A stretch of DNA of 64,000 bases from Macrostomum lignano (taxonomy: Eukaryota), in the NCBI GenBank assembly GCA_002269645.1, contig NIVC01000362.1:588883-652882 (forward strand), written 5' to 3'. The notes beneath the pieces were generated by a model, which saw only the letters and a list, made by a program, of their open reading frames with translations, was not told the DNA's origin and made no database searches. The stretch's first letter is position 1, and every line of letters begins with the position of its first letter. Positions 17,351-63,159 of this stretch are shown one piece after another. The position numbers and the translations under genes are program-made.

Positions 17351-17359
17351 TCTGCTCAC

Positions 17360-29160: not shown

Positions 29161-29175
29161 GAGCACAGCACGCAC

Positions 29176-31613: not shown

Positions 31614-31627
31614 CTGCGCGTGGCAGA

Positions 31628-32100: not shown

Positions 32101-32147
32101 GAAGTGAATTTGAAAATTAGAGGTTCTTCTAATTTCCCACTGCAAAC

Positions 32148-32504: not shown

Positions 32505-32559
32505 CTGAGCGGTTTGAGACAATTGGAGCAAATACTTGAGTTGTACGAATTTTGTAATA

Positions 32560-34350: not shown

Positions 34351-34439
34351 AAATAGTACTCTAGAACCCAGAGTCACTCTAGAAAGGTCACTCCAAAACT
34401 AATAAATCGTCTCTATATGCACACTCAAAGCGGACCAAC

Positions 34440-35607: not shown

Positions 35608-35939
35608 TCCTGTCGAGAATGTCTATAAGGAAGCTCAGTCTCTGCCCCATAGGCGTCTCACTAAAATAGAGTCAATAAATCAATCAAGTTTTATTTTACT
35701 AATAGTTCTATTTCATAAACTGCTAACAGTTTTCTTACTAGCTAATAAATTGAACTTAAAGAACGACTCGATCAGCTTAAAGCGCAAAAAATCGATAGAG
35801 TCAAAATGCAGGCCGAACACTCAAAGAGAAGCCGTACACTATGACATAAAAAGCGAACAAAAGTACATTTATCCCACAGTTATTACATGAACAAGCAAAA
35901 ACTTTAACAATGGAACAAACTGTGAATTGTGAAAGGAAC

Positions 35940-36645
35940 CACAAAATAGCCATCATGACGTGGTAGATCTACTCATCAAAGCACGATGAAAATGGCCATC
36001 ATGAGGTGGTAGATCTACTCATCAAAGCACGATGAAAATGGCCATCATGAGGTGGTAGATCTACTTATCAAAGCACAATACAAAATGGCCATCATGAGGT
36101 GGTAGATCTACTCATCAAAGCACAATACAAAATGGCCATCATGAGGTGGTAGATCTACTTATCAAAGCACAATACAAAATGGCCATCATGAGGTGGTAGA
36201 TCGACTCATCAAAGCACAATACAAAATGGCCATCATGAGGTGGTAGATCTACTTATCAAAGCACAATACAAAATGGCCATCATGAGGTGGTAGATCTACT
36301 CATCAAAGCACAATACAAAATGGCCATCATGAGGTGGTAGATCGACTCATCAAAGCACAATACAAAATGGCCATCATGAGGTGGTAGATCTACTCATCAA
36401 AGCACAATACAAAATGGCCATCATGAGGTGGTAGATCTACTTATCAAAGCACAATACAAAATGGCCATCATGAGGTGGTAGATCGACTCATCAAAGCACA
36501 ATACAAAATGGCCATCATGAGGTGGTAGATCGACTCATCAAAGCACAATACAAAATGGCCATCATGAGTTGGTAGATCTACTCATCAAAGCACAATACAA
36601 AATAGCCATCATGAGGTGGTAGATCTACTCATCAAAGCACGATGA
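35940..36645. repeat. 47-bp satellite array (CAAAATGGCCATCATGAGGTGGTAGATCTACTCATCAAAGCACAATA), about 15 copies
   Basis: Direct tandem copies, period 47. Confidence 0.95.
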
Positions 36646-39600
36646 AAATGGAGCCAAAAGCCGGCCGACAACTCAAACAGAGAACGCCGACAGTGACATA
36701 AAATGCTCAAACTTGATGCTAACTTCCGAGAGGCCACACACACATATAAGAGTTGCCACCAACTCTGATATAAAGAGAACAAAAAGTACTTTTAACCCAC
36801 AATAATTATACTTGCAATATTAACAGAACTGAACTGCAACAAAAAGGGAGGAACCTTTGCTGCTGCGCCTCCCATCCCATCTGCAAAGCAGCCTAGCACA
36901 GGATGAGAAGCACAGAATGGTCATCATAAAGTCGTGAGCAGGCTGATCAAAGCACAATAAATCAATAAAGTCAATTTGGTGGCAGAGTGCTGAATGGCGT
37001 CAGAGACATCAATTGCAGCAACAGCCCGTGTTACTGCCGTGAGCACACTATGTGAGAAAGCTGTCGCATCAAAGCACAGTGATAGATCCCACTTGGATAT
37101 CCCACAAATTCTCACCGAAAACAGTGAGACAAAGAAAGAATTTTGTTCAACAGCAATGACTGAGGTGGATAAGATGCAAAACTAAAACATATTACACACG
37201 GTTTCAGATTGGAGTTTGAATGAGAGTTGAAGAACTCAGGCAGCTTCACCGTACTCCAACACCGCAGTGAAGGCAGCAGAGAAAGGACACTTGCAAGTAG
37301 TAGCCAGGCTGTGCAACTGTGCAACAGGTGTTAGCGAGGCGGCACACATCAAAGACATGCCGCCGACTCTGACATGAAAAACTTTACAAAGTACGCTTAA
37401 AGAGAAACTGTACACTCTGACATAAAAAAGTGAACAAAAGTACATTTATCCCACAGTGATTAATGAAAAATCAAAACAGTTTAAATGGATCAAATTGTGA
37501 CGAGAATCACAAAATGGCCATCATGAGGTGGTAGATCTACTCATCAAAGCACAATAAAAATGGAGTCAAAATGCCGGCCATAGCCTCAAAGAAAGGCCGC
37601 CGACAGGGACATCAAAAGCTCAAACTTGATGCTACTTCTGTTAATCAGAATGGGTTGAGAAGCCGAACGTCTCAAAGCACAGTAAGTTTGGTCTGACAAA
37701 AATGAAAAAGCATGACCAGTTCGGTAAAATCATGTTTACAATCAGAGGTTTTTCCTAAAGATTTTTATAATTGTCTTTGGATGACATTTTCGTAGCTTAT
37801 TCTGAATGTTGTTATACGTTTCATTTTACAGTTTGCTACTTACATGTATGACCTCAGTAGTGAGTAGCGAGTTCAGTACCTTGACCTAAAATGGTTGAAT
37901 AGTGAAACTTTAACAAAGTGGCAGTTTTATACCACTAAAAACCAGTTCCGTTCACAAGAGGTCTTCGCTGTTTAAAAGTCCTGAGCTCGATTCCGCTCAC
38001 AGCCAGCCGCTGAGCTGTGGCTTCAATCACAGCGCTGAGACGGCTGTGACTCACTCATAAAAGCAAAATTTGGTGATTTAAATGAATACTTTTTCAATCA
38101 GTAAATTTACTAATTTAACCGGCAATCTGCGTTTTAATGGCATTAAAAGGCTGAGCATCCTAAGAACAGCTCATCAATATTAAGAGTTAAGCACAGGACT
38201 GGGGTCTCGCACAGGCACAATGGCACTGTGAACAGTGTCTGTATCTGATAACAGCTTAAATTTAAGTCAAACTTGGACTCTACGATATTTTGGTATACCA
38301 AAGGTATATAAGTGAATAGCCAAACTTAAAATCTACCTTAAAACTACATTGCAGACAGAGAGAAGCATGAGGGCAAATAAGTATGGAAAATAAGAAGCTT
38401 ATTTTAATATCATTATTGTTATTTTGTCATATTTACTGTTGCTTATTTATTTACTTCAAGAATCCTATACACAAGCAGTATTTAGCGCAATGAAAGCTAC
38501 ACAACACTGCTAAAGGTGTCAGCAAGACGGCACACATCAAAGATGCCACAGATTCTTCCATAACAAGTGAAGTACTTTTACCCCACACTTAAAACTACAA
38601 AATCATTTCAAAAAACATTTCACTTCAAAGAACGAAAATGAAAAAATGGTGACAAAAATCACAAAATGGCCATCATGTGGTAGATCTACTCATCAAAGCA
38701 CGATAAAAATGGAGCCAAAAGCCGGCCGACAACTCAAACAGAGAACGCCGACAGTGACATAAAATGCTCAGACTTGATGCTAACTTCCGAGAGGCCACAC
38801 ACATAAAAGAGTTGCCACCAACTCTGATATAAAGAGAACAAAAAGTACTTTTAACCCACAATAATTATACTTGCAATATTAACAGAACTGAACTGCAACA
38901 AAAAGGCAGGAACCTTTGCTGCTGCGCCTTCCATCCCATCTGCAAAGCAGCCTAGCACAGGATGAGAAGCACAGAATGGTCATCATAAAGTCGTGAGCAG
39001 GCTGATCAAAGCACAATAAATCAATAAAGTCAATTTGGTGGCAGAGTGCTGAATGGCGTCAGAGACATCAATTGCAGCAACAGCCCGTGTTACTGCCGTG
39101 AGCACACTATGTGAGAAAGTTGTCGCATCAAAGCACAGTGATAGATCTCACTTGGATATCCCACAAATTCTCACCGAAAACAGTGAGACAAAGAAAGAAT
39201 TTCGTTCAACAGCAATGACTGAGGTGGATAAGATGCAAAAGCAAAATATATTACACACGGTTTCAGATTGGAGTTTGAATGAGAGTTGAAGAACTCAGGC
39301 AGCTTCACCGTACTCCAACACCGCAGTGAAGGCAGCACAGAAAGGGCACTTGCAAGTTGTAGCCAGGCTGTGCAACTGTGCAACAGGTGTCAGCGAGACG
39401 GCACACATCAAAGATGCCGTTGACAGACAAAAAAGTAAAAGTACATTTATCCCACAGTATTCATAACAAATTTAATTACAACAGAAACTTTTCGCTTGAA
39501 AATACTAAAAGGGCAAACTGTGACAAGAATCACAAAATGGCCATCATGAGGTGGTAGATCGACTCATCAAAGCACGATGAAAATGGAGTCAAAATGCCGG

Positions 39601-40529: not shown

Positions 40530-41265
40530 TAAAGCGGTGAAGCTACTCATCAAAGCACAATACAAAATGGCCATCATGAGGTGGTAGATCTACTCATCAA
40601 AGCACAATACAAAATGGCCATCATGAGGTGGTAGATCTACTCATCAAAGCACAATACAAAATGGCCATCATGAGGTGGTAGATCTACTCATCAAAGCACA
40701 ATACAAAATGGCCATCATGAGGTGGTAGATCTACTCATCAAAGCACAATACAAAATGGCCATTATGAGGTGGTAGATCTACTCATCAAAGCATAATACAA
40801 AATGGCCATCATGAGGTGGTAGATCGACTCATCAAAGCACAATACAAAATGGCCATCATGAGGTGGTAGATCTACTCATCAAAGCACAATACAAAATGGC
40901 CATCATGAGGTGGTAGATCTACTCATCAAAGCACAATACAAAATGGCCATCATGAGGTGGTAGATCTACTCATCAAAGCACAATACAAAATGGCCATCAT
41001 GAGGTGGTAGATCTACTCATCAAAGCACAATACAAAATGGCCATCATGAGGTGGTAGATCGACTCATCAAAGCACAATACAAAATGGCCATCATGAGGTG
41101 GTAGATCGACTCATCAAAGCACAATACAAAATGGCCATCATGAGGTGGTAGATCTACTCATCAAAGCACAATACAAAATGGCCATCATGAGGTGGTAGAT
41201 CGACTCATCAAAGCACAATACAAAATGGCCATCATGAGGTGGTAGATCGACTCATCAAAGCACGA
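40530..41265. repeat. 47-bp satellite array, about 16 copies
   Basis: Same monomer. Confidence 0.95.
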
Positions 41266-42077
41266 TGAAAATGGAGCCAAAAGCCGGCCGACAACTCAAA
41301 CAGAGAACGCCGACAGTGACATAAAGAGCTCAAACTTGATGCTAACTTCCGAGAGCCCACACATATAAAAGAGGTGCCACCAACTCTGATATAAAGAGAA
41401 CAAAAAGTACTTTTAACCCACAATAATTATACTTGCAATATTAACAGAACTTAACGGCAACAAAAAGGCAGGAACCTTTGCTGCTGCGCCTCCTATCCCA
41501 TCTGCAAAGCAGCCTAGCACAGGATGAGAAGCACAGAATGGTCATCATAAAGTCGTGAGCAGGCTGATTAAAGCACAATAAACCAATAAAGTCAATTTGG
41601 TGGCAGAGTGTTGAATGGCATCAGAGACATCAATTGCAGCAACAGCCCGTGTTACTGCCGTGAGCACACCACGTGAGAAAGTTGTCGCATCAAAGCACAG
41701 TGACAGATCCCACTTGGATGTCCCACGAATTCTCACTGAGAACAGTGAGACAAACAAATAATTTTGTTCAACAGCCATGATTGAGTTGGATAAGATGCAA
41801 AACTAAAACATTACACACGGTTTCAAATTTGAGTTTGAATGAGAGCTGACGAACTCAGCAGCTTCTCCATGCCCCGACACCGCAGTGAAGGCAGCACAGA
41901 ATGGGCACTTGCAAGTTGTAGCCAGGCTGTGCAACTGTGCAACAGGTGTCAGCGAGACGGCACACATCAAAGAGAAGCTGTACACTCTGACGTAAAAAGT
42001 GAACAAAAGTACATTTATCCCACAGTGATTAATGAAAAATCAAAACAGATTTAAATGGATCAAATTGTGACGAGAAT

Positions 42078-42455
42078 CACAAAATGGCCATCATGAGGTG
42101 GTAGATCTACTCATCAAAGCACAATACAAAATGGCCATCATGAGGTGGTAGATCTACTCATCAAAGCACAATACAAAATGGCCATCATGAGGTGGTAGAT
42201 CTACTTATCAAAGCACAATACAAAATGGCCATCATGAGGTGGTAGATCGACTCATCAAAGCACAATACAAAATGGCCATCATGAGGTGGTAGATCTACTC
42301 ATCAAAGCACAATACAAAATGGCCATCATGAGGTGGTAGATCTACTCATCAAAGCACGATACAAAATGGTCATCATGAGGTGGTAGATCGACTCATCAAA
42401 GCACAATACAAAATGGCCATCATGAGGTGGTAGATCTACTTATCAAAGCACGATA
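42078..42455. repeat. 47-bp satellite array, about 8 copies
   Basis: Same monomer. Confidence 0.93.
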
Positions 42456-44159
42456 AAAAATGGAGTCAAAATGCCGGCCATAACCTCAGAGAGGCCGCCG
42501 ACAGGGACATCAAAAGCTCAAACTTGATGCTACTCTGTAAATCAGAATGGGTTGAGAAGCCAAAACGTCTCAACGCAAAGTAAGTTTGGTCTGACAAAAA
42601 CGATAAAGCATGACCAGTTCGGTAAAATATGTTTACAATCAGAGGCTGTTCCTAAAATATATTTATAATTGTTGCTAAACTAAACTTTCCAACTGATAAT
42701 TGTATCGCTTAGAAGTTGGCTAAAATTGTTTGAACTGAATACTTTTAAACCAATAAAAGAATTTCCGTTCACACGAGGTCTTCGCTGCTCAAAGGTCCTG
42801 AGCTCGATCCCGCTTACAGTGAGCCGTAGAGCTGTGGCTTCAATCACAGCGCAGAGACACCGTGCATCATGAAAGCATGATTTGGAGATTCAAATGAAAA
42901 CTTTGTCAATCAGGAAAATTTACTAATTTATCTGGCCGTCTGCATTTCAGTAGCTTTAGAGGGCTGAGCATTCTGAGGGGAGCTCATCCAGATTGAGAGT
43001 TAGTCACAGGACTGGCACACAGGCACACTGGTACAGTGAAGTGTATGGATCTGATAGCATATCTTAAATTTAAGTACAACAATAAAGTCTGCAATACGAG
43101 TATTTGATATTCCTAGGGTACTAAAGTGAGAAACTAAACCTAAATCTACCTTTAAAACTACATTGCAGACAAAGAAGCGTTAAGGCGAAAAGTACAAGTA
43201 AAGCAAATAGGAAGCTTATTTTAATATTATTGTTATTTTGTCATACAAATAGTCGTTTATTAAATTTATCTAGTTCAAAAGTCCTAACAAGCATTCAGCA
43301 CCATAGAAGCTACAAAACTGTGCAACAGGTGTTGGAGAGACGGTACACATCAAAGAGGTACCGCCCACTCTGGCATAACAAGTTAACAAAGTACTTTTAT
43401 CCCACGCTATTTACGAGTTATTAAATATTAAATACAATACTAATCAGAACAACTTTTAACATCAAAAATTGAAATGAAACAAATTGTGACAAGAAATTCT
43501 CAGTGAATATTACAGATACTCACGCGTAAAAAATCACAACCAAGAATGTCGTTTAGAAAAATATTACACAGCTTCAGATTTGAGTTTGAATAAGAGCTGA
43601 CGAACTCAAGCAGCTTCTGCGTGCTCCCACACACCGCAGTGAAGGCAGCACAGAAAGGACACTTGCAAGTTGTAGCCAGGCTGTGCAACTGTGCAGCAGG
43701 TAACAGCAAGGCGGCACACATCAAAGACACCGCCGACTCTGACATGAAAAACTTAACAAAGTACGCTCAAAGAGAAACTGTACACTGTGACAAAAAAGTG
43801 AACAAAAGTACATTCATCCCACAGTGATTAATGAAAAAGCAACAGTTTTAAATGGATCAAATTGTGACAAGATTCACAAAATGGCCATCATGAGTTGGTA
43901 GATCTACTCAATAATGAACGATAAAAATGGAGCCAAAAGCCGGCCGACAACTCAAACAGAGAACGCCGACAGTGACATAAAATGCTCAAACTTGATGCTA
44001 ACTTCCGAGAGCCCACACGCACATATAAGAGTTGCCACAAACTCTGATATAAAGAGAACAAAAAAGTACTTCTATTCCACACTAATTATAAGTACAATAC
44101 TAATAAGAATAAGAACTTTTCTCCTCAGAAAACAGAAATGGCACAAATTGTGACAAGAA

Positions 44160-44910
44160 TCACAAAATGGCCATCATGAGGTGGTAGATCTACTCATCAA
44201 AGCACAATACAAAATGGCCATCATGAGGTGGTAGATCTACTTATCAAAGCACAATACAAAATGGCCATCATGAGGTGGTAGATCTACTCATCAAAGCACA
44301 ATACAAAATGGCCATCATGAGGTGGTAGATCTACTCATCAAAGCACAATACAAAATGGCCATCATGAGGTGGTAGATCTACTCATCAAAGCACAATACAA
44401 AATGGCCATCATGAGGTGGTAGATCTACTCATCAAAGCACAATACAAAATGGCCATCATGAGGTGGTAGATCTACTCATCAAAGCACAATACAAAATGGC
44501 CATCATGAGGTGGTAGATCTACTTATCAAAGCACAATACAAAATGGCCATCATGAGGTGGTAGATCTACTCATCAAAGCACAATACAAAATGGCCATCAT
44601 GAGGTGGTAGATCTACTCATCAAAGCACAATACAAAATCGCCATCATGAGGTGGTAGATCGACTCATCAAAACACAATACAAAATGGCCATCATGAGGTG
44701 GTAGATCGACTCATCAAAGCACAATACAAAATAGCCATCATGAGGTGGTAGATCGACTCATCAAAGCACAATACAAAATAGCCATCATGAGGTGGTAGAT
44801 CGACTCATCAAAGCACAATACAAAATGGCCATCATGAGGTGGTAGATCTACTCATCAAAGCACAATACAAAATGGCCATCATGAGGTGGTAGATCGACTC
44901 ATCAAATCAC
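44160..44910. repeat. 47-bp satellite array, about 16 copies
   Basis: Same monomer. Confidence 0.95.
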
Positions 44911-45714
44911 GATGAAAATGGAGCCAAAAGCCGGCCGACAACTCAAACAGAGAACGCCGACAGTGACATAAAATGCTCAAACTTGATGCTAACTTCCGAG
45001 AGCCCACACATATAAAAGAGGTGCCACCAACTTTGATATAAAGAGAACAAAAAGTACTTTTAACCCACAATAATTATACTTGCAATATCAACAGAACTTA
45101 ACGGCAACAAAAAGGGAGAAACCTTTGCTGCTGCGCCTCCCATCCCATCTGCAAAGCAGCCTAGCACAGGATGAGAAGCACAGAATGGTCATCATAAAGT
45201 CGTGAGCAGGCTGATCAAAGCACAATAAATCAATAAAGTCAATTTGGTGGCTGGTGGCAGGGTGCTGAATGGCGTCAGAGACATCAATTGCAGCAACAGC
45301 CCGTGTTACTGCCGTGAGCACACCACGTGAGAAAGTTGTCGCATCAAAGCACAGTGACAGATCCCACTTGGATGTCCCACGAATTGAAATAATTTTGTTC
45401 AACAGCCATGATTGAGTTGGATAAGATGCAAAACTAAAACATATTACACACGGTTTCAAATTTGAGTTTGAATGAGAGCTGACGAACTCAAGCAGCTTCT
45501 CCATGCCCCGACACCGCAGTGAAGGCAGCACAGAATGGGCACTTGCAAGTAGTAGCCAGGCTGTGCAACTGTGAAACAGGTGTCAGCGAGACGGCACACA
45601 TCAAAGAGAAGCTGTACACTCTGACGTAAAAAGTGAACAAAAGTACATTTATCCCACAGTGATTAATGAAAAATCAAAACAGATTTAAATGGATCAAATT
45701 GTGACGAGAATCAC

Positions 45715-45995
45715 AAAATGGCCATCATGAGGTGCTAGATCTACTCATCAAAGCACAATACAAAATGGCCATCATGAGGTGGTAGATCGACTCATCAAAG
45801 CACAATACAAAATGGCCATCATGAGGTGGTAGATCTACTTATCAAGGCACGATACAAAATGGCCATCATGAGGTGGTAGATCTACTTATCAAAGCACAAT
45901 ACAAAATGGCCATCATGAGGTGGTAGATCGACTCATCAAAGCACAATACAAAATGGCCATCATGAGGTGGTAGATCTACTTATTAAAGCACAATA
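45715..45995. repeat. 47-bp satellite array, about 6 copies
   Basis: Same monomer. Confidence 0.93.
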
Positions 45996-48372: not shown

Positions 48373-48565
48373 ACAAAATGGCCATCATGAGGTGGTAGAT
48401 CGACTCATCAAAGCACAATACAAAATGGCCATCATGAGGTGGTAGATCGACTCATCAAAGCACAATACAAAATGGCCATCATGAGGTGGTAGATCTACTC
48501 ATCAAAGCACAATACAAAATGGCCATCATGAGGTGGTAGATCGACTCATCAAAGCACAATACAAA
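48373..48565. repeat. 47-bp satellite array, about 4 copies
   Basis: Same monomer. Confidence 0.9.
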
Positions 48566-50234: not shown

Positions 50235-50705
50235 ACAAAATGGCCATCATGAGGTGCTAGATCTACTCATCAAAGCACAATACAAAATGGCCATCATGAG
50301 GTGGTAGATCTACTCATCAAAGCACGATACAAAATGGTCATCATGAGGTGGTAGATCTACTCATCAAAGCACAATACAAAATGGCCATCATGAGGTGGTA
50401 GATCTACTCATCAAAGCACAATACAAAATGGCCATCATGAGGTGGTAGATCTACTTATCAAAGCACAATACAAAATGGCCATCATGAGGTGGTAGATCGA
50501 CTCATCAAAGCACAATACAAAATGGCCATCATGAGGTGGTAGATCTACTCATCAAAGCACAATACAAAATGGCCATCATGAGGTGGTAGATCTACTCATC
50601 AAAGCACGATACAAAATGGTCATCATGAGGTGGTAGATCGACTCATCAAAGCACAATACAAAATGGCCATCATGAGGTGGTAGATCTACTTATCAAAGCA
50701 CGATA
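50235..50705. repeat. 47-bp satellite array, about 10 copies
   Basis: Same monomer. Confidence 0.93.
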
Positions 50706-53693
50706 AAAAATGGAGTCAAAATGCCGGCCATAACCTCAGAGAGGCCGCCGACAGGGACATCAAAAGCTCAAACTTGATGCTACTCTGTAAATCAGAATGG
50801 GTTGAGAAGCCAAAACGTCTCAACGCAAAGTAAGTTTGGTCTGACAAAAACGATAAAGCATGACCAGTTCGGTAAAATATGTTTACAATCAGAGGCTTTT
50901 CCTAAAATATATTTATAATTGTTGCTAAACTAAACTTTCCAACTGATAATTGTATCGCTTAGAAGTTGGCTAAAATTGTTTGAACTGAATACTTTTAAAC
51001 CAATAAAAGAATTTCCGTTCACACGAGGTCTTCGCTGCTCAAAGGTCCTGAGCTCGATCCCGCTTACAGTGAGCCGTAGAGCTGTGGCTTCAATCACAGC
51101 GCAGAGACACCGTGCATCATGAAAGCATGATTTGGAGATTCAAATGAAAACTTTGTCAATCAGGAAAATTTACTAATTTATCTGGCCGTCTGCATTTCAG
51201 TAGCTTTAGAGGGCTGAGCATTCTGAGGGGAGCTCATCCAGATTGAGAGTTAGTCACAGGACTGGCACACAGGCACACTGGTACAGTGAAGTGTATGGAT
51301 CTGATAGCATATCTTAAATTTAAGTACAACAATAAAGTCTGCAATACGAGTATTTGATATTCCTAGGGTACTAAAGTGAGAAACTAAACCTAAATCTACC
51401 TTTAAAACTACATTGCAGACAAAGAAGCGTTAAGGCGAAAAGTACAAGTAAAGCAAATAGGAAGCTTATTTTAATATTATTGTTATTTTGTCATACAAAT
51501 AGTCGTTTATTAAATTTATCTAGTTCAAAAGTCCTAACAAGCATTCAGCACCATAGAAGCTACAAAACTGTGCAACAGGTGTTGGAGAGACGGTACACAT
51601 CAAAGAGGTACCGCCCACTCTGACATAACAAGTTAACAAAGTACTTTTATCCCACGCTATTTACGAGTTATTAAATATTAAATACAATACTAATCAGAAC
51701 AACTTTTAACATCAAAAATTGAAATGAAACAAATTGTGACAAGAAATTCTCAGTGAATATTACAGATACTCACGCGTAAAAAATCACAACCAAGAATGTC
51801 GTTTAGAAAAATATTACACAGCTTCAGATTTGAGTTTGAATGAGAGCTGTCGAACTCAAGCAGCTTCTGCGTGCTCCCACACACCGCAGTGAAGGCAGCA
51901 CAGAAAGGACACTTGCAAGTTGTAGCCAGGCTGTACAACTGTGCAGCAGGTAACAGCAAGGCGGCACACATCAAAGACACCGCCGACTCTGACATGAAAA
52001 ACTTAACAAAGTACGCTCAAAAAGAAACTGTACACTGTGACAAAAAAGTGAACAAAAGTACATTCATCCCACAGTGATTAATGAAAAATCAACAGTTTTA
52101 AATGGATCAAATTGTGACAAGATTCACAAAATGGCCATCATGAGTTGGTAGCTCTACTCAATAATGAACGATAAAAATGGAGCCAAAAGCCGGCCGACAA
52201 CTCAAACAGAGAACGCCGACAGTGACATAAAATGCTCAAACTTGATGCTAACTTCCGAGAGCCCACACGCACATATAAGAGTTGCCACCAACTCTGATAT
52301 AAAGACAACAAAAAAGTACTTTTATTCCACACTATTTATAAGTACAATACTAATAAGAATAAGAACTTTTCTCCTCAGAAAACAGAAATGGCACAAATTG
52401 TGACAAGAATCACAAAATGGCCATCATGAGGTGGTAGATCTACTCATCAAAGCACAATAAAAATCGAGTCAAAATGCCGGCCATAACCTCAAAGAGGCCG
52501 CCGACAGGGACATCAAGAGCCCAAAATTGATGCTACTTCTGCTAACAGAATAAGTTGAGAAGCTGCCGCTTCCCAGCATACAGTGGATCATGTCCACCAT
52601 AAGATCCCCACAGCACATTATCAAATGCTAGAGATAGCAAAACCATAAGAACCACACGGATGCATAACAAATCGTACTCCGCAAAATTATAATAAAACTC
52701 CAAAACATCTTTAAACTTCTTATAAAATGGCGCTGACAAAAGTACGACAAGAGTATTACAACTGACACAAAGTACACGGGTGTTTCAAGACGCTAAAAGT
52801 GCAAAAACGTCACATGAACTCTGCTGCTTCTCCATGCCCCGACACCGCAGTGAAGGCAGCACAGAAAGGGCACTTGCAAGTAGTGGCCAGGCTATGCAAC
52901 TGTGAAACAGGTGTCAGAGCCGGCACACATCAAAGACATGCCGCCGACTCTGACATAAAAAGTGAGCAAAGTACTTTTATCCCACACAATAAATAAATAC
53001 AATACTAATTAGAACAAGAACTTTTAATTTCAGAAACTGAAATTATAAATTGTGACAAGAAATTCTCAGTGAGTACAGATACTCAGGCGTAGAAAAAATT
53101 CACGACAAAAATGTAGCTAAAAAACACGGTAAACTCAATCAGAACTGCATAGAATGCCATCATATTTGCGAATGGTGAGCGCTCATATTCGTTCTATGTA
53201 GCCTATAGGAATTTCCGTTCCCACTCGTATGCTCCTCAGTGTTTTAAATAAAACGAACAGACAGTGGAGGCGCTCGCTTCACTCTTTTCTCTCGCCCGCC
53301 TCTGCAGGCCCAAAGGCATGGCCACTGCCTCGGCTGGGCTGTAGAACCGTGAAATACTGCGCTTTGAATTCAATTCTTTGCTATCCGATGTAAGCAGAAG
53401 GTGCAGGCAGTACGCAAAATCCTACCTGTTACAGTATGATTTTGAATGAGAGCTGACAAACTCAAGCAGCTTCTCCATACTCCCACACCGCAGTGAAGGC
53501 AGCAGAGAAAGGACACTTGCAAGTTGTAGCCAGACTGTGCAACCGAAGCGGCACAAATCAAAGACATGCCGCCGACTATGACATTAAAATGTAAACAAAG
53601 TACTTTTATCCCACAGAATTTATAAATACAATACTAATTAAAACAGGAACTTTACTTTAGGAGCTAAAAATGGCACAAATTGTGACAAGAATC

Positions 53694-53933
53694 ACAAAAT
53701 GGCCATTATGAGGTGGTAGATCGACTCATCAAAGCACAATACAAAATAGCCATCATGAGGTGGTAGATCGACTCATCAAAGCACAATACAAAATGGCCAT
53801 CATGAGGTGGTAGATCGACTCATCAAAGCACAATACAAAATGGCCATCATGAGGTGGTAGATCTACTCATCAAAGCACAATACAAAATGGCCATCATGAG
53901 GTGGTAGATCGACTCATCAAAGCACAATACAAA
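53694..53933. repeat. 47-bp satellite array, about 5 copies
   Basis: Same monomer; duplicate of the 48373 array with one extra unit. Confidence 0.9.
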
Positions 53934-55602
53934 ATGGAGCCAAAAGCCGGCCGACAACTCAAACAGAGAACGCCGACAGTGACATAAAATGCTCAAACTT
54001 GATGCTAACTTCCGAGAGCCCACACATATAAAAGAGGTGCCACCAACTCTGATATAAAGAGAACAAAAAGTACTTTTAACCCACAATAATTATACTTGCA
54101 ATATTAACAGAACTTAACGGCAACAAAAAGGGAGGAACCTTTGCTGCTGCGCCTCCCATCCCATCTGCAAAGCAGCCTAGCACAGGATGAGAAGCACAGA
54201 ATGGTCAGCATAAAGTCGTGAGCAGGCTGATCAAAGCACAATAAATCAATAAAGTCAATTTGGTGGCAGAGTGCTGAATGGCGTCAGAGACATCAATTGC
54301 AGCAACAGCCCGTGTTACTGCCGTGAGCACACCACGTGAGAAAGTTGTCGCATCAAAGCACAGTGACAGATCCCACTTGGATGTCCCACGAATTCTCACT
54401 GAGAACAGTTAGACAAACAAATAATTTTGTTCAACAGCCATGATTGAGTTGGATAAGATGCAAAACTAAAACATTACACACGGTTTCAAATTTGAGTTTG
54501 AATGAGAGCTAACGAACTCAAGCAGCTTCTCCATGCCCCGACACCGCAGTGAAGGCAGCACAGAATGGGCACTTGCAAGTAGTAGCCAGGCTGTGCAACT
54601 GTGAAACAGGTGTCAGCGAGACGGCACACATCAAAGAGAAGCTGTACACTCTGACGTAAAAAGTGAACAAAAGTACATTTATCCCACAGTGATTAATGAA
54701 AAATCAAAACAGATTTAAATGGATCAAATTGTGACGAGAATCACAAAATGGCCATCATGAGGTGCTAGATCTACTCATCAAAGCACAATACAAAATGGAG
54801 CCAAAAGCCGGCCGACAACTCAAACAGAGAACGCCGACAGTGACATAAAATGCTCAAACTTGATGCTAACTTCCGAGAGCCCACACATATAAAAGAGGTG
54901 CCACCAACTCTGATATAAAGAGAACAAAAAGTACTTTTAACCCACAATAATTATACTTGCAATATTAACAGAACTTAACGGCAACAAAAAGGCAGGAACC
55001 TTTGCTGCTGCGCCTCCCATCCCATCTGCAAAGCAGCCTAGCACAGGATGAGAAGCACAGAATGGTCATCATAAAGTCGTGAGCAGGCTGATTAAAGCAC
55101 AATAAACCAATAAAGTCAATTTGGTGGCAGAGTGTTGAATGGCATCAGAGACATCAATTGCAGCAACAGCCCGTGTTACTGCCGTGAGCACACCACGTGA
55201 GAAAGTTGTCGCATCAAAGCACAGTGACAGATCCCACTTGGATGTCCCACGAATTCTCACTGAGAACAGTGAGACAAACAAATAATTTTGTTCAACAGCC
55301 ATGATTGAGTTGGATAAGATGCAAAACTAAAACATTACACACGGTTTCAAATTTGAGTTTGAATGAGAGCTGACGAACTCAGCAGCTTCTCCATGCCCCG
55401 ACACCGCAGTGAAGGCAGCACAGAATGGGCACTTGCAAGTTGTAGCCAGGCTGTGCAACTGTGCAACAGGTGTCAGCGAGACGGCACACATCAAAGAGAA
55501 GCTGTACACTCTGACGTAAAAAGTGAACAAAAGTACATTTATCCCACAGTGATTAATGAAAAATCAAAACAGATTTAAATGGATCAAATTGTGACGAGAA
55601 TC

Positions 55603-56073
55603 ACAAAATGGCCATCATGAGGTGCTAGATCTACTCATCAAAGCACAATACAAAATGGCCATCATGAGGTGGTAGATCTACTCATCAAAGCACGATACAA
55701 AATGGTCATCATGAGGTGGTAGATCTACTCATCAAAGCACAATACAAAATGGCCATCATGAGGTGGTAGATCTACTCATCAAAGCACAATACAAAATGGC
55801 CATCATGAGGTGGTAGATCTACTTATCAAAGCACAATACAAAATGGCCATCATGAGGTGGTAGATCGACTCATCAAAGCACAATACAAAATGGCCATCAT
55901 GAGGTGGTAGATCTACTCATCAAAGCACAATACAAAATGGCCATCATGAGGTGGTAGATCTACTCATCAAAGCACGATACAAAATGGTCATCATGAGGTG
56001 GTAGATCGACTCATCAAAGCACAATACAAAATGGCCATCATGAGGTGGTAGATCTACTTATCAAAGCACGATA
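55603..56073. repeat. 47-bp satellite array, about 10 copies
   Basis: Duplicate of the 50235 array. Confidence 0.93.
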
Positions 56074-59059
56074 AAAAATGGAGTCAAAATGCCGGCCATA
56101 ACCTCAGAGAGGCCGCCGACAGGGACATCAAAAGCTCAAACTTGATGCTACTCTGTAAATCAGAATGGGTTGAGAAGCCAAAACGTCTCAACGCAAAGTA
56201 AGTTTGGTCTGACAAAAACGATAAAGCATGACCAGTTCGGTAAAATATGTTTACAATCAGAGGCTTTTCCTAAAATATATTTATAATTGTTGCTAAACTA
56301 AACTTTCCAACTGATAATTGTATCGCTTAGAAGTTGGCTAAAATTGTTTGAACTGAATACTTTTAAACCAATAAAAGAATTTCCGTTCACACGAGGTCTT
56401 CGCTGCTCAAAGGTCCTGAGCTCGATCCCGCTTACAGTGAGCCGTAGAGCTGTGGCTTCAATCACAGCGCAGAGACACCGTGCATCATGAAAGCATGATT
56501 TGGAGATTCAAATGAAAACTTTGTCAATCAGGAAAATTTACTAATTTATCTGGCCGTCTGCATTTCAGTAGCTTTAGAGGGCTGAGCATTCTGAGGGGAG
56601 CTCATCCAGATTGAGAGTTAGTCACAGGACTGGCACACAGGCACACTGGTACAGTGAAGTGTATGGATCTGATAGCATATCTTAAATTTAAGTACAACAA
56701 TAAAGTCTGCAATACGAGTATTTGATATTCCTAGGGTACTAAAGTGAGAAACTAAACCTAAATCTACCTTTAAAACTACATTGCAGACAAAGAAGCGTTA
56801 AGGCGAAAAGTACAAGTAAAGCAAATAGGAAGCTTATTTTAATATTATTGTTATTTTGTCATACAAATAGTCGTTTATTAAATTTATCTAGTTCAAAAGT
56901 CCTAACAAGCATTCAGCACCATAGAAGCTACAAAACTGTGCAACAGGTGTTGGAGAGACGGTACACATCAAAGAGGTACCGCCCACTCTGACATAACAAG
57001 TTAACAAAGTACTTTTATCCCACGCTATTTACGAGTTATTAAATATTAAATACAATACTAATCAGAACAACTTTTAACATCAAAAATTGAAATGAAACAA
57101 ATTGTGACAAGAAATTCTCAGTGAATATTACAGATACTCACGCGTAAAAAATCACAACCAAGAATGTCGTTTAGAAAAATATTACACAGCTTCAGATTTG
57201 AGTTTGAATGAGAGCTGTCGAACTCAAGCAGCTTCTGCGTGCTCCCACACACCGCAGTGAAGGCAGCACAGAAAGGACACTTGCAAGTTGTAGCCAGGCT
57301 GTACAACTGTGCAGCAGGTAACAGCAAGGCGGCACACATCAAAGACACCGCCGACTCTGACATGAAAAACTTAACAAAGTACGCTCAAAAAGAAACTGTA
57401 CACTGTGACAAAAAAGTGAACAAAAGTACATTCATCCCACAGTGATTAATGAAAAATCAACAGTTTTAAATGGATCAAATTGTGACAAGATTCACAAAAT
57501 GGCCATCATGAGTTGGTAGCTCTACTCAATAATGAACGATAAAAATGGAGCCAAAAGCCGGCCGACAACTCAAACAGAGAACGCCGACAGTGACATAAAA
57601 TGCTCAAACTTGATGCTAACTTCCGAGAGCCCACACGCACATATAAGAGTTGCCACCAACTCTGATATAAAGACAACAAAAAAGTACTTTTATTCCACAC
57701 TATTTATAAGTACAATACTAATAAGAATAAGAACTTTTCTCCTCAGAAAACAGAAATGGCACAAATTGTGACAAGAATCACAAAATGGCCATCATGAGGT
57801 GGTAGATCTACTCATCAAAGCACAATAAAAATCGAGTCAAAATGCCGGCCATAACCTCAAAGAGGCCGCCGACAGGGACATCAAGAGCCCAAAATTGATG
57901 CTACTTCTGCTAACAGAATAAGTTGAGAAGCTGCCGCTTCCCAGCATACAGTGGATCATGTCCACCATAAGATCCCCACAGCACATTATCAAATGCTAGA
58001 GATAGCAAAACCATAAGAACCACACGGATGCATAACAAATCGTACTCCGCAAAATTATAATAAAACTCCAAAACATCTTTAAACTTCTTATAAAATGGCG
58101 CTGACAAAAGTACGACAAGAGTATTACAACTGACACAAAGTACACGGGTGTTTCAAGACGCTAAAAGTGCAAAAACGTCACATGAACTCTGCTGCTTCTC
58201 CATGCCCCGACACCGCAGTGAAGGCAGCACAGAAAGGGCACTTGCAAGTAGTGGCCAGGCTATGCAACTGTGAAACAGGTGTCAGAGCCGGCACACATCA
58301 AAGACATGCCGCCGACTCTGACATAAAAAGTGAGCAAAGTACTTTTATCCCACACAATAAATAAATACAATACTAATTAGAACAAGAACTTTTAATTTCA
58401 GAAACTGAAATTATAAATTGTGACAAGAAATTCTCAGTGAGTACAGATACTCAGGCGTAGAAAAAATTCACGACAAAAATGTAGCTAAAAAACACGGTAA
58501 ACTCAATCAGAACTGCATAGAATGCCATCATATTTGCGAATGGTGAGCGCTCATATTCGTTCTATGTAGCCTATAGGAATTTCCGTTCCCACTCGTATGC
58601 TCCTCAGTGTTTTAAATAAAACGAACAGACAGTGGAGGCGCTCGCTTCACTCTTTTCTCTCGCCCGCCTCTGCAGGCCCAAAGGCATGGCCACTGCCTCG
58701 GCTGGGCTGTAGAACCGTGAAATACTGCGCTTTGAATTCAATTCTTTGCTATCCGATGTAAGCAGAAGGTGCAGGCAGTACGCAAAATCCTACCTGTTAC
58801 AGTATGATTTTGAATGAGAGCTGACAAACTCAAGCAGCTTCTCCATACTCCACACCGCAGTGAAGGCAGCAGAGAAAGGACACTTGCAAGTTGTAGCCAG
58901 ACTGTGCAACCGAAGCGGCACAAATCAAAGACATGCCGCCGACTATGACATTAAAATGTAAACAAAGTACTTTTATCCCACAGAATTTATAAATACAATA
59001 CTAATTAAAACAGGAACTTTACTTTAGGAGCTAAAAATGGCAAAAATTGTGAAAAGAAT

Positions 59060-60423
59060 CACAAAATGGCCATTATGAGGTGGTAGATCGACTCATCAAA
59101 GCACAATACAAAATGGCCATCATGAGGTGGTAGATCGACTCATCAAAGCACAATACAAAATGGCCATCATGAGGTGGTAGATCTACTCATCAAAGCACAA
59201 TACAAAATGGCCATCATGAGGTGGTAGATCTACTTATCAAAGCACAATACAAAATGGCCATCATGAGGTGGTAGATCTACTCATCAAAGCACAATACAAA
59301 ATGGCCATCATGAGGTGGTAGATCGACTCATCAAAGCACAATACAAAATGGCCATCATGAGGTGGTAGATCGACTCATCAAAGCACAATACAAAATGGCC
59401 ATCATGAGGTGGTAGATCGACTCATCAAAGCACAATACAAAATGGCCATCATGAGGTGGTAGATCGACTCATCAAAGCACAATACAAAATGGCCATCATG
59501 AGGTGGTAGATCTACTTATCAAAGCACAATACAAAATGGCCATCATGAGGTGGTAGATCGACTCATCAAAGCACAATACAAAATGGCCATCATGAGGTGG
59601 TAGATTTACTCATCAAAGCACAATACAAAATGGCCATCATGAGGTGGTAGATCGACTCATCAAAGCACAATACAAAATGGCCATCATGAGGTGGTAGATC
59701 TACTCATCAAAGCACAATACAAAATGGCCATCATGAGGTGGTAGATCGACTCATCAAAGCACAATACAAAATGGCCATCATGAGGTGGTAGATCTACTCA
59801 TCAAAGCACAATACAAAATGGCCATCATGAGGTGGTAGATCGACTCATCAAAGCACAATACAAAATGGCCATCATGAGGTGGTAGATCGACTCATCAAAG
59901 CACAATACAAAATGGCCATCATGAGGTGGTAGATCTACTTATCAAAGCACAATACAAAATGGCCATCATGAGGTGGTAGATCGACTCATCAAAGCACAAT
60001 ACAAAATGGCCATCATGAGGTGGTAGATCGACTCATCAAAGCACAATACAAAATGGCCATCATGAGGTGGTAGATCGACTCATCAAAGCACAATACAAAA
60101 TGGCCATCATGAGGTGGTAGATCGACTCATCAAAGCACAATACAAAATGGCCATCATGAGGTGGTAGATCTACTTATCAAAGCACAATACAAAATGGCCA
60201 TCATGAGGTGGTAGATCGACTCATCAAAGCACAATACAAAATGGCCATCATGAGGTGGTAGATCTACTCATCAAAGCACAATACAAAATGGCCATCATGA
60301 GGTGGTAGATCGACTCATCAAAGCACAATACAAAATGGCCATCATGAGGTGGTAGATCTACTTATCAAAGCACAATACAAAATGGCCATCATGAGGTGGT
60401 AGATCTACTTATCAAAGCACAAT
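59060..60423. repeat. 47-bp satellite array, about 29 copies (longest)
   Basis: Same monomer. Confidence 0.95.
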
Positions 60424-63159
60424 AAAAATGGAGCCAAAATGCCGGCCATAGCCTCAGAGAGGCCACCGACAGGGACATCAAAAGCTTAAACTTGATGCTA
60501 CTCTGTAAATCAGAATGGGTTGAGAAGCCAAAACGTCTCAACGCAAAGTAAGTTTGGTCTGACAAAAACGATAAAGCATGACCAGTTCGGTAAAATATGT
60601 TTACAATCAGAGGCTGTTCCTAAAGTATATTTATAATTGTTGCTAAACTAAACTTTCCAACTGATAATTGTATTACTTAGAAGTTGGCTAAAATTGTTTG
60701 AACTGAATACTACTCATTAGGTCAGTAGTGAGAAGCGAGTTGAGCACATTGAGCTAAAATGGTTAGGTGATCAAACTTTAAAAAATTGAGTTTTAAACCA
60801 CTAAAAAGAATTATCCGACCACAGGTCTTTACTGCTCAAAGTTCCCAAGCTCGATCCCACCTTGATGAGATCCGGAGGCCCTTTGAGGTTTAGGTAGAGG
60901 CTGCAATTCGAGACCTGCTGAAGCACGCTTTAAACAGAGAAGCCGCCAAGGTGAAGCGCCGCCGTACGGTAGGACTTGAGGTGACTGCGCATCTGCAAAC
61001 AGATTTTCTACAGCACGCTTTTGCTTCGTTGAGCGACTGCTTTAAATTGTACTGTAGCTCACAGCTCACAGTAGACCGTGACTTCAAGCACAGCGCTGAG
61101 ACGGCCGCGACTCATAAAAGCATGATTTGGGTATTGAAATGAAAACTTTGTCAATCAGTAAAATTAAATAAATCACTGACAGATTGAATGAAAGAAAGCA
61201 ATTTAACTGGTCGTCTGAATTTCTGTGGCATTGGGGGGCTGATCATCCTAAAGCCTCGCACTGGCACTGTGAACAGTGTCTGAATCTGATCTACCTTAAA
61301 ACTGCATTGCTGCCCAGAAGCATGAGGGCAAATAAGTATGGCAAATAAAAAAGCATATTTAAATAACTTTGTTACTTTGAAAAATTAACTGATGTTTCTT
61401 TATTTAGTTCAAAAGTGCTGAATAAAAACAGCCTTTGGCTCCATTGAAGCTGCACAACTGTGCAACAGGTGTGAGAGAGACGGCACACATCAAAGAGATG
61501 CACTAATTCTGACAAAGAGAACAAGGTACACTTATCCCACACTTTAAAATTACAAAATTATTTTTAAACGTTTCAATTAAGAAATGGAATGGCACAAACT
61601 GCGACAAGAATTACAAAATGGCCAACATGAGGTGGTAGATCTACTCATCAAAGCACAATAAAAATCGAGCCAAAATGCCGGCCATAAGCTCAAAGAGAGG
61701 CCGCCGACAGGGACAGCAAGAGCTCAAAAGTTGCAGCTGACAGAAGAACAAGTGTTTTACTACTGACAGACATACGACGTGTTCTTTAAGACGCTAAAAG
61801 TGCAAAAATATCACATGAACTCAGCAGCTTCTCCATGCCCCGACACCGCAGTGAAGGCAGCACAGAAAGGGCACTTGCAAGTAGTGGCCAGGCTGTGCAA
61901 CTGTGCAACAGATGTCAGCGAGGCGACACACATCAAAGACATGCCGCCGACTCTGACATAAAAAGTGAGCAAAGTACTTTTATTCCACACTATTTATACA
62001 TACAATACTAATTAGAACAAGAACTTTTAATTTCAGAAACTGAAAAAAAGCCTAAATTGTTGCAAGAATTACAAAATGGCCATCATGAGGTGGTAGATCT
62101 ACTCATCAAAGCACGATAAAAATGTGCAACAGGTGCCAAAGCCGATACACAACTTAGATTGCCGTTGAGTCTGACACAAAGAACAAAGTAGTTTTATCCC
62201 ACACCATTTATATTTGATACACTGCAGCAGGACAACAAATCCAGAATAGAAGCCTATGAGAACAGACAAGATCATTGACACCTGCAGCCGGCGTCATCAC
62301 AACTGATGCAGCTGGAGATGCACAAACGCCTCTTATGGCTGCAAATTAGGAAGAAAAACGACGTGAACAAAACAGGCGGCAACGGGCGAGGCTCGCCACA
62401 ATGAGTCAGAAGTCCAGACTCAGCAACGGCAGGAATAGGACAATCAGAGGCAAATCAGATCAAAGAAATGCCGCTGACTAGCATAAAGAGAGAACGAAAT
62501 ACTTTTATCCCACATTATTTATTACAGTATTATTCTAAAAACTCTTCTCCTCAGAAAGCAGAAATGGCACAAACTGTGACAAGAATCACAAAATGGCCAT
62601 CATGAGGTGGTAGATCTACTCATCAAAGCACAATAAAAATCGAGTCAAAATGCCGGCCATAACCTCAGAGAGGTCTCCAACAGGGACATCAAGAGCTCAA
62701 ATGCGATGCTACTTCTGCTAACAGAATGAGTTGAGAAGCTGCCGCTTCCCAGCCTGCAGTGGATCATGTCCACCATGAGAATGCCACAGCACATTATCAA
62801 ATGTTGGACTACACAGATGCATAATGACAAAATCGTACTCCAAAAACTCATAATAAAAATTACAAAAAATGTTTGAATTTCTGATAAAATTGTAGCGCAA
62901 GAGTTTTATAGACTCAAAACACACGGGTGTTTCAAGACTCAAGCAGTTTCTTCATGCTCCCACACCGCAGTGCAGCATAGAAAGGACACTTGCAAGTTGT
63001 AGCCAGGCTGTGCAAATGTGCAACAGGTACCACAGAATCGGTACACATCAAAGAGATATCGACATAAAAATGAACAATAGTACTTTTATCCCACACTATT
63101 TATAACTATAATAGTAATTAGAGCATTTAAATGATTCCAAAGAAAAGCGTATTCGGTCG

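What the first reader, a model, noticed from the sequence alone, without database searches (positions are those of the whole stretch)
35800..63120. 27-kb cryptic ankyrin-cassette mosaic: satellite-like DNA built from shuffled ankyrin-repeat pieces, all on one strand
Seen: the region looks like junk repeat, but its plus strand repeatedly spells ankyrin sub-motifs. Examples are AAEKGHLQVVARL or AAQNGHLQVVARL (20 copies, e.g. 37270-37310, 39958, 41890, 62985), AQNGHHKVVSRLIKA (8 copies, e.g. 36910), SQNGHHEVVDLLIKA, HLDVPRILTEN (41711), FTVL..HTAV, DENGA, LKLDAN, KRGATNSDIK and ADSDIK. They are joined out of frame through short deletions and insertions and arranged in recurring modules in varying order. 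Established: the ankyrin consensus is GxTPLHxAAxxGHxEVVxLLLxxGADVN; other organisms diversify repeat proteins by copying from silent partial cassettes (lamprey VLR LRR cassettes, Borrelia vlsE silent cassettes). Inference: the region is (a) a deletion-ridden graveyard of tandem ankyrin paralogues turned macrosatellite, (b) a silent donor library for gene conversion into expressed ankyrin genes, or (c) a small-RNA (piRNA/endo-siRNA) source against an ankyrin family. The plain graveyard explanation is the most parsimonious, and I cannot distinguish these from sequence alone.
Basis: partly seen in the sequence, partly recalled or inferred. Interest (0 to 1): 0.85.

Follow-up and report, generated by a model that had tools for sequence, protein, structure and literature searches.

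The report
Ankyrin-pseudogene-derived satellite in a flatworm
A 27-kb block of tandemly repeated junk DNA in a Macrostomum flatworm genome was most likely seeded by a dead ankyrin-repeat gene and then amplified. It is a tidy example of how satellites arise, not a hidden diversification system.

Summary
From 35,817 to 63,095 the window is a head-to-tail mosaic repeat, all on one strand. Its plus strand repeatedly spells ankyrin helix-turn-helix fragments: 128 monomers of a 47-bp minisatellite reading QNGHHEVVDLLIKAQ, 20 copies of GHLQVVARL and 8 of QNGHHKVVSRLIKA. None occur on the minus strand.

A consensus ankyrin query gives 96 plus-strand hits and 0 minus-strand hits. With the arrays removed it gives 45 and 0, against about 1 per strand in shuffles. 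There are only four or five cassette types, covering about 30% of the region. There is no TPLH or GADVN motif, and no single cassette reaches Pfam significance.

The cassette types differ mainly at third codon positions (P about 5e-4), so they diverged while still coding. Copies of a type decay neutrally: 41 of 48 indels break the frame, the 47-bp period breaks the frame, and stops are everywhere.

The host is Macrostomum, a genus with very tandem-repeat-rich genomes. The block lies upstream of a DEAH-helicase gene.

The best reading is a pseudogenised ankyrin gene fragment turned into a composite macrosatellite with a nested minisatellite. A donor-cassette role is disfavoured. A small-RNA role is untestable here. 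Interest is low.

The parts
35817..63095 (+). Whole composite tandem repeat (macrosatellite), all units head-to-tail on one strand. A-rich plus strand: A 36.6%, T 22.4%.
   Evidence: Self-BLAST and mapping to the reference unit; composition.
48369..53737 (+). Reference long unit of 5,369 bp: 47-bp array, two 861-bp K-D-L-E subunits, 47-bp array, 1.2-kb spacer, then cassettes L2-E2-E3-L3-L4.
53738..59104 (+). Second copy of the long unit, 99.8% identical: a very recent tandem duplication.
35941..36651 (+). 47-bp minisatellite array, about 15 copies.
   Evidence: TRF; monomer census.
40543..41274 (+). 47-bp array, 15.6 copies.
42079..42463 (+). 47-bp array, 8.2 copies.
44162..44921 (+). 47-bp array, 16.2 copies. 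It sits where other units carry a single E3 cassette.
45713..46002 (+). 47-bp array, 6.2 copies.
48373..48569 (+). 47-bp array, 4.2 copies.
50235..50713 (+). 47-bp array, 10.2 copies. The homologous site at 49,375-49,421 carries a single E cassette.
53694..53937 (+). 47-bp array, 5.2 copies.
55603..56081 (+). 47-bp array, 10.2 copies.
59061..60431 (+). 47-bp array, 29.2 copies, the longest.
49383..50243 (+). One 861-bp subunit carrying cassettes K, D, L and E. Gly-codon spacings are 168, 195 and 183 bases.
49687..49734 (+). K cassette, AQNGHHKVVSRLIKAQ followed by TAA. 8 copies in the region.
49858..49899 (+). D cassette, DRSHLDVPRILTEN. 7 copies.
50038..50085 (+). L cassette, AVKAAQNGHLQVVARL. 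20 copies in 13 sequence variants.
50233..50280 (+). E cassette, SQNGHHEVLDLLIKAQ, the seed of the 47-bp minisatellite. With its upstream W-x-K-L it matches 22-27 residues of real ankyrin repeats.
51847..52074 (+). Longest stop-free ankyrin-like piece: L2, 76 codons.
   Evidence: HMMER search.
50714..51846 (+). Spacer S1, about 1.1 kb. No Pfam domain in any of the six frames and no inverted repeats. It contains a decayed L-type tail (QNCATGVGETVHIKE).
46003..47183 (+). Spacer S2, a diverged relative of S1. A second copy lies at 60,432-61,612 with 97% identity. No Pfam domain in six frames.

Best explanation
The block is non-coding satellite DNA. It is a composite macrosatellite with long units of about 5.4 kb and subunits of 861 bp, and a 47-bp minisatellite nested inside it.

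The seed was a fragment of an ankyrin-repeat gene that held several already-diverged repeats (cassette types K, D, L and E). That gene lost its reading frame. The dead fragment was then amplified head-to-tail by unequal crossing-over. The E cassette was separately expanded by slippage or unequal exchange into 47-bp arrays of 4 to 29 copies at several homologous sites.

Shown: the tandem single-strand architecture, recent duplications, nested arrays of variable size, ankyrin-like motifs confined to one strand, a coding-type substitution pattern between cassette types, and frame-blind decay among copies.

Inferred: that the ancestor was a functional ankyrin gene, that amplification went by unequal exchange and slippage, and that the block has no present function.
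For: - Architecture: only same-strand self-matches. A 5,369-bp unit is duplicated at 99.8% identity, and older copies are 76-97% identical.
- Ten 47-bp arrays differ in length and variant order. Single E cassettes sit at homologous sites in other units.
- Ankyrin signal on the plus strand only: Pfam Ank/Ank_2 hits in 3 of 3 plus frames and 0 of 3 minus frames.
- Consensus-ankyrin tblastn gives 96 plus and 0 minus HSPs, 45 and 0 without the arrays, against about 1 per strand in shuffles.
- All 20 database hits to a stitched cassette peptide are ankyrin proteins. They carry near-identical motifs: QNGHHEVVKILLQSQ, AAQNGHLQVVKFL, WTALMMASQNGHCEVVERLLAAQ.
- Past coding constraint: K, E and L differ at codon positions 1/2/3 by 6/4/12 minimum changes (P = 5e-4). 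K versus E has 6 synonymous and 4 non-synonymous codon differences in the ankyrin frame, against 1 and 9 in either shifted frame (simulation P = 0.003).
- The upstream stops of K and E lie at different codons. Read against the other cassette types, each looks like a single-base change: TGA in K where E has CGA, TGA in E where K has GGA. I infer that they arose independently.
- Present lack of constraint: 41 of 48 indels between copies are not multiples of three. The commonest 47-mer variant is a second-position Leu-to-Arg change in the helix core. The 47-bp period gives two stops per 141 bases.
- No other Pfam domain, including any transposon protein, appears in the units or spacers.
- Host context: the window is from Macrostomum. 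In the M. lignano assembly, simple and tandem repeats make up 15% of the genome (PMC5730564). The left half of this window is itself packed with minisatellites.
Against: - Each cassette matches only 13-27 residues of the 33-residue repeat. TPLH and GADVN are absent.
- Single cassettes give no Pfam hit, so the Pfam significance comes from summing array copies.
- Per-cassette tblastn scores (22-23 bits) are only a little above the shuffle maximum of 19.6. An unrelated 35-bp minisatellite at 5.8-6.4 kb gives a spurious 23.9-bit gapped hit.
- Repeat-rich targets inflate E-values. The top HMMER hit to the L2 piece (E = 2.4e-11) is an immunoglobulin-repeat protein.
- Cassette spacings of 168-226 bases are not multiples of 99.
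- K and E share the TAA straight after LIKAQ. That fits a coding ancestor only if it was the true stop codon of a terminal repeat.
- The third-position test rests on 12-16 codons, and the frame was chosen after the fact.
- No parent gene was found.
- Lack of function is inferred, not shown.
Confidence: 0.7

Rival explanations
1. Chance resemblance. The block is an ordinary satellite whose monomer happens to translate into an ankyrin-like 13-15-mer in one frame. The other cassettes are simply diverged DNA copies of the same segment.
For: Single cassettes do not reach Pfam significance. An unrelated 35-bp minisatellite in the same window gives a comparable spurious hit. A non-ankyrin Ig-repeat protein tops the HMMER list. 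There are no TPLH or GADVN motifs. About 70% of the region has no coding similarity.
Against: Differences between cassette types are concentrated at third positions of exactly the ankyrin frame (P = 5e-4; 6 synonymous to 4 non-synonymous against 1 to 9 in other frames). The residues kept across K, E, L and D are the ankyrin signature positions (A10, G13, H14, V17, V18, L21). The E cassette extends to a 22-27-residue match at 48-59% identity. All 20 hits are ankyrin proteins.
Confidence: 0.15
2. Small-RNA or long non-coding RNA locus. The single-strand array is transcribed as one precursor and processed into piRNAs or siRNAs that target an ankyrin family or the repeat itself. This is compatible with a pseudogene origin.
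For: All units share one orientation over 27 kb, as in uni-strand piRNA clusters. The block lies in an intergenic position upstream of the DEAH-helicase gene's first exon.
Against: One orientation follows automatically from tandem duplication. There are no inverted copies to form double-stranded RNA and no transposon remnants. No close target gene is known. No expression data are available.
Confidence: 0.08
3. Silent donor library. Partial ankyrin cassettes are copied by gene conversion into an expressed ankyrin gene to diversify it, as in lamprey VLR or Borrelia vlsE.
For: Many partial cassettes of a repeat-protein motif are clustered at one locus.
Against: Cassette diversity is tiny: four or five types, and the L peptide core GHLQVVARL is invariant in all 13 variants. 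That is the opposite of a diversity library. No cassette is a full in-frame repeat, and stops flank the cores. The 47-bp period and 41 of 48 frame-breaking indels show no frame maintenance. No incomplete acceptor gene lies in the 64-kb window. No protein more than 37% identical exists among 5.8 billion.
Confidence: 0.02
4. A live multi-exon ankyrin gene or gene cluster, in which the cassettes are exons and the rest is intron.
For: The stop-free L-type pieces reach 50-76 codons.
Against: K and E cores are bounded by in-frame stops 2-4 codons upstream and immediately downstream in every copy. There is no 33-residue periodicity and no complete repeat. No gene with these products is on record. The 47-bp arrays would lie inside the 'exons'.
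Confidence: 0.01

Closest known systems
Composite macrosatellites and higher-order tandem repeats with nested minisatellites (satellite DNA in the broad sense)
   Same: Head-to-tail units above 500 bp with composite internal structure. Recent homogenisation or duplication (99.8%) sits beside older diverged copies. Array length varies, and there is no open reading frame. Reviews note that tandem repeats can arise from virtually any sequence (PMC12692304).
   Different: Only one 27-kb locus was seen, so genome-wide abundance and chromosomal location are unknown. The seed appears to be protein-coding sequence rather than the more usual transposon or other repeat.
Gene-containing or gene-derived macrosatellites, such as human D4Z4 (DUX4) and the USP17 (RS447) repeat (from my own knowledge, not checked here)
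   Same: Kilobase-sized tandem units that trace back to a protein-coding gene.
   Different: Those units keep an intact or nearly intact open reading frame. Here only 13-27-residue fragments remain, and a 47-bp piece has become a minisatellite of its own.
Ankyrin repeat proteins (Pfam PF00023 / PF12796) of the 'TAL..AAQNGHLQVVKFL' type
   Same: The cassettes reproduce the end of helix 1, the turn and helix 2 (AAxxGHxxVVxxL[LI]), with exact words such as QNGHHEVV and AAQNGHLQVV found in real proteins.
   Different: There is no TPLH beta-turn, no GADVN loop, no 33-residue period and no open frame. The best database identity is 37% or less over the stitched peptide.
Silent-cassette diversification systems (lamprey VLR, Borrelia vlsE, chicken pseudo-V genes)
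   Same: Clustered partial copies of a repeat or variable module lacking their own expression signals.
   Different: Those cassettes are diverse and usable in frame, and they accompany an expression site. Here the cassettes are nearly monomorphic, broken by stops and frameshifts, with no acceptor in view.

Membership tests
Satellite / macrosatellite DNA | Units arranged head-to-tail in tandem on one strand | tested here: met
   Only direct self-matches. A 5,369-bp unit is repeated at offset 5,369, and 861-bp and 47-bp periods are nested inside it.
Satellite / macrosatellite DNA | High identity between neighbouring copies (recent amplification or homogenisation) with variable copy number | tested here: met
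   Long units are 99.8% identical, many modules 94-99%, and 47-bp arrays hold 4 to 29 copies with 94-98% matches.
Satellite / macrosatellite DNA | No protein-coding constraint on the copies | tested here: met
   About 94 stops per frame in the 5.4-kb unit. 41 of 48 indels are not multiples of three. Array variants are not biased to third positions.
Satellite / macrosatellite DNA | Abundance across the genome or a heterochromatic location | not testable with these tools
   No Macrostomum genome or read set can be searched here.
Ankyrin repeat (Pfam PF00023 / PF12796), as sequence ancestry | Significant match to the Ank profile on the sense strand only | tested here: inconclusive
   Ank_2 scores 4.7e-8 and Ank 4.5e-6 in plus frames, with none in minus frames. 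The match covers only model positions 11-23 and depends on summed array copies. Single cassettes give nothing.
Ankyrin repeat (Pfam PF00023 / PF12796), as sequence ancestry | Signature of past selection in the ankyrin reading frame | tested here: met
   Third-position excess of 6/4/12 (P = 5e-4). 6 synonymous to 4 non-synonymous differences against 1 to 9 in shifted frames.
Ankyrin repeat protein, as a present-day gene | Consecutive complete 33-residue repeats with TPLH and GADVN-type loops in an open frame | tested here: not met
   TPLH and GA[DN][VIP]N counts are zero. Spacings are 168-226 bases. Stops occur throughout.
Silent donor cassettes for gene conversion (VLR / vlsE type) | Diverse cassettes that can be copied in frame | tested here: not met
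   There are four or five types. The L core peptide is invariant in 13 variants. Stops and frameshifts flank the cores.
Silent donor cassettes for gene conversion (VLR / vlsE type) | An expressed or incomplete acceptor gene sharing patches with the cassettes | tested here: not met
   None lies in the 64-kb window. No protein is more than 37% identical among 5.8 billion, a set that includes M. lignano entries. Limited by what the database holds.
piRNA / endo-siRNA cluster | Small RNAs mapping to the locus | not testable with these tools
   No small-RNA data are available.
piRNA / endo-siRNA cluster | Transposon remnants, or inverted copies able to form double-stranded RNA | tested here: not met
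   No Pfam transposon domain. No inverted self-matches.

The most novel reading that the evidence does not exclude
The single-strand array is a transcribed regulatory locus: a uni-strand piRNA or long non-coding precursor born from an ankyrin pseudogene, whose small RNAs act on an ankyrin family or on the repeat itself. A remoter possibility is a gene-conversion donor for an unannotated ankyrin gene.
Probability: 0.06. Interest if true: 0.6.

Novelty: new member of a known kind. Interest (0 to 1): 0.2.

Why it matters
It is a clear, datable example of satellite birth from protein-coding sequence. The order of events can be read directly: repeats diverged under selection, the gene died, the unit was amplified, and one 47-bp piece then took off as a minisatellite at several homologous sites. 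That is useful for repeat annotation in Macrostomum genomes, where such blocks hamper assembly and can trigger false ankyrin gene calls. It also illustrates how repeat-on-repeat matches inflate database statistics. It does not open a new biological question.

Tried and rejected
- Pfam scans by DNA reference failed because of stop codons. I repeated them with X-masked translations.
- Rfam over the whole window found nothing.
- Exact-product look-ups for three window ORFs found no record, so no related locus could be fetched.
- I looked for a parent gene two ways: a 423-residue stitched cassette peptide against 5.8 billion proteins, and the 76-residue L2 piece by HMMER against 1.84 billion representatives. 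Both returned only generic ankyrin proteins, and in the second case spurious repeat proteins as well.
- I considered a transposon-borne gene capture. There is no transposon protein domain in the units or spacers and no terminal inverted repeats in spacer S1.
- I considered micro-exons or micro-introns at cassette borders. I rejected this on reading the borders: the stops lie 2-4 codons from the cores, and I saw no GT immediately after the K and E cores, only candidate GT sites inside the cassettes that would leave exons of about 23 bases.
- I tested for present constraint on cassette cores among 861-bp copies. The result was weak and not significant: 0.08 against 0.13 changes per site, third-position counts 3/4/9.
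- I checked whether the flanking 69-bp minisatellite is related to the block. No significant match.
- Literature searches found no description of this repeat.
Full report
**What the window is.** The left 35 kb carries real genes, all on the minus strand.
- A ZDHHC16-type palmitoyltransferase ORF at 19,481-20,623 is 93% identical to a Macrostomum lignano protein. The next best hit, from a nemertean, is 41%.
- DEAH-box helicase exons with DEAD, Helicase_C and HA2 domains, and a DeoC-type aldolase exon, are confirmed by Pfam.
- The gaps between these exons are filled almost entirely by different minisatellites.

So the window comes from a Macrostomum flatworm. In the M. lignano assembly, simple and tandem repeats make up 15% of the genome (PMC5730564). 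M. lignano subgenomes differ by only about 2% (PMC10733133). The 93% protein identity therefore suggests a sibling species or an imperfect gene model. I did not resolve this.

**The observation.** From 35,817 to 63,095 the sequence is a mosaic tandem repeat.
- Self-BLAST gives only same-strand matches.
- Everything maps onto a 5,369-bp reference unit at 48,369-53,737. That unit is repeated at 53,738-59,104 with 99.8% identity. Other modules are 76-99% identical and occur in varying order.
- Inside the unit there is an 861-bp subunit and a 47-bp minisatellite, which forms ten arrays of 4 to 29 copies: 128 monomers, 22% of the block.
- The plus strand is A-rich: 36.6% A against 22.4% T.

There are 20 GHLQVVARL copies, 8 QNGHHKVVSRLIKA copies and 5 HLDVPRILTEN copies, among others. 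All are on the plus strand, in all three frames, with none on the minus strand and none in the left half. One quoted motif, FTVL, is not strand-specific and is noise.

**Is it ankyrin, and is it more than chance?** An unbiased consensus ankyrin peptide searched by tblastn gives:

| Sequence searched | Plus-strand HSPs | Minus-strand HSPs |
|---|---|---|
| Whole block | 96 | 0 |
| Block with 47-bp arrays deleted | 45 | 0 |
| 20 dinucleotide shuffles (mean) | about 1 | about 1 |

Pfam Ank/Ank_2 hits all three plus frames of the reference unit and no minus frame. A stitched cassette peptide finds 20 proteins among 5.8 billion, every one an ankyrin protein. Some carry the very words QNGHHEVV and AAQNGHLQVV. 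With its upstream W-x-K-L, the E cassette matches 22-27 residues of a real repeat at 48-59% identity.

The signal is thinner than it looks, for these reasons.
- There are only four or five cassette types (K, D, L, E and variants).
- Each covers Ank model positions 11-23 of 33. TPLH and GADVN are absent.
- Single cassettes give no Pfam hit at all, and spacers give none either. The Pfam significance therefore comes from adding up array copies.
- Per-cassette scores of 22-23 bits are only modestly above the shuffle maximum of 19.6.
- An unrelated 35-bp minisatellite at 5.8-6.4 kb yields a spurious 23.9-bit hit.
- The best HMMER hit to a 76-residue cassette piece (E = 2.4e-11) is an immunoglobulin-repeat protein. 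That shows how repeat-on-repeat matching inflates E-values.

**The test that separates descent from chance.** The cassette types are homologous at the DNA level but differ mostly at third codon positions of the ankyrin frame.
- Across 12 codons, K, E and L show 6, 4 and 12 minimum changes at positions 1, 2 and 3 (P = 5e-4, or about 1.5e-3 after allowing for the choice of frame).
- K versus E has 6 synonymous and 4 non-synonymous codon differences in that frame, against 1 and 9 in either shifted frame (simulation P = 0.003).
- The residues held constant are the ankyrin signature positions.
- The stops just upstream of K and E sit at different codons. Read against the other cassette types, each looks like a single-base change: TGA in K where E has CGA, TGA in E where K has GGA. 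I infer that they arose independently.

I conclude, with about 75-80% confidence, that the types diverged while they were repeats of a working ankyrin gene. One oddity remains. K and E share a TAA directly after LIKAQ, overlapping an AATAAA. This fits if the ancestor was a terminal repeat followed by the true stop codon, but that is only an inference.

**What happened afterwards.** Copies of the same type evolve without regard to frame.
- 41 of 48 indels between copies are not multiples of three.
- The commonest 47-mer variant is a second-position Leu-to-Arg change in the helix core, and array variation shows no third-position bias.
- The 47-bp period puts two stops into every 141 bases.
- A check for residual constraint on cassette cores among 861-bp copies was weak and not significant.
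- Single E cassettes occupy sites that are expanded into arrays in sister units. The minisatellite therefore grew locally, more than once or with large size changes.

**Mechanism.** The best-supported account is this. A multi-repeat ankyrin coding fragment lost function. It was duplicated in tandem by unequal exchange into a composite macrosatellite, with slippage or unequal exchange blowing up one 47-bp cassette. The block sits in intergenic DNA upstream of the helicase gene's first exon, between a 36-bp and a 69-bp minisatellite. The architecture and substitution patterns are shown. The mode of amplification and the lack of present function are inferred.

**Rivals.**
- Pure chance resemblance (about 0.15) is weakened mainly by the codon-position result.
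- A donor library for gene conversion (about 0.02) is contradicted on four counts. The cassettes are nearly monomorphic, with the L peptide core invariant in 13 variants. They are broken by stops and frameshifts. They lack any acceptor gene in the window. They have no close relative among known proteins.
- A small-RNA or non-coding RNA locus (about 0.08) cannot be tested here. Single orientation follows automatically from tandem duplication. There are no inverted copies or transposon remnants.
- A live multi-exon gene (about 0.01) is excluded by the stops hugging the cores.

**Comparison with the known, and verdict.** This works like, and qualifies as, a composite macrosatellite with nested minisatellite. 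Its unusual aspect is a protein-coding seed. That is known in principle, since satellites can arise from virtually any sequence (PMC12692304). It is not a member of the ankyrin protein family in any functional sense, nor of the silent-cassette systems. I rate it a new member of a known kind, with low interest (0.2). The most novel reading not excluded is a pseudogene-born small-RNA locus, at about 6%.

Noticed in passing
window 10,690-34,925 (minus strand): Four or more real genes, all on the minus strand: a DEAH/HA2 helicase (exons at 29,113-29,994, 30,729-31,838, 32,049-32,531 and 34,425-34,925), ZDHHC16 (19,481-20,623), a DeoC aldolase (17,279-17,875 and 13,372-13,707), and an ORF starting MGGSYS at 10,690-11,634. 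The gaps between exons consist almost wholly of minisatellite arrays, and ORF calls run from exons into translated repeats.
   Followed up: partly
window 457-690, 8,297-9,235, 18,700-19,467; 1,444-1,910 and 5,161-6,530; 24,153-24,274 and 27,696-28,206; 26,221-27,123 and 30,057-30,501: The same minisatellite families (28-bp, 35-bp, 31-bp and 16-bp units) recur at separate places in and between different genes. This suggests dispersed minisatellite families rather than purely local slippage.
   Followed up: no
window 5,834-6,445: The unrelated 35-bp minisatellite translates to NRNGHSTDSLH... It gives a spurious gapped ankyrin hit of 23.9 bits, about as high as a single real cassette. This is a warning about repeat-driven false positives.
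   Followed up: yes
protein P0141 (HMMER hit to window 51,847-52,074): The top hit of the 1.84-billion-protein search (E = 2.4e-11) is an immunoglobulin-domain repeat protein with seven identical matching stretches. The match is not homologous. E-values against internally repetitive targets are unreliable.
   Followed up: yes
window 19,481-20,623: The ZDHHC16 ORF is 93% identical to the M. lignano UniRef protein. Published subgenome divergence in M. lignano is about 2%. The window may come from a sibling Macrostomum species, or the reference protein model may differ.
   Followed up: partly
window 63,161-64,000: A 69-bp minisatellite (12 or more copies) abuts the right end of the block and runs off the window. 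It has the strongest A-over-T skew in the window (0.41) but no significant similarity to the ankyrin-like unit.
   Followed up: partly
window 49,729-49,745 and e.g. 52,455-52,470: K and E cassettes end in ...AAAGCACAATAAA. An in-frame TAA directly after LIKAQ overlaps an AATAAA hexamer. This may be the ancestral stop codon and polyadenylation signal of the dead gene.
   Followed up: no
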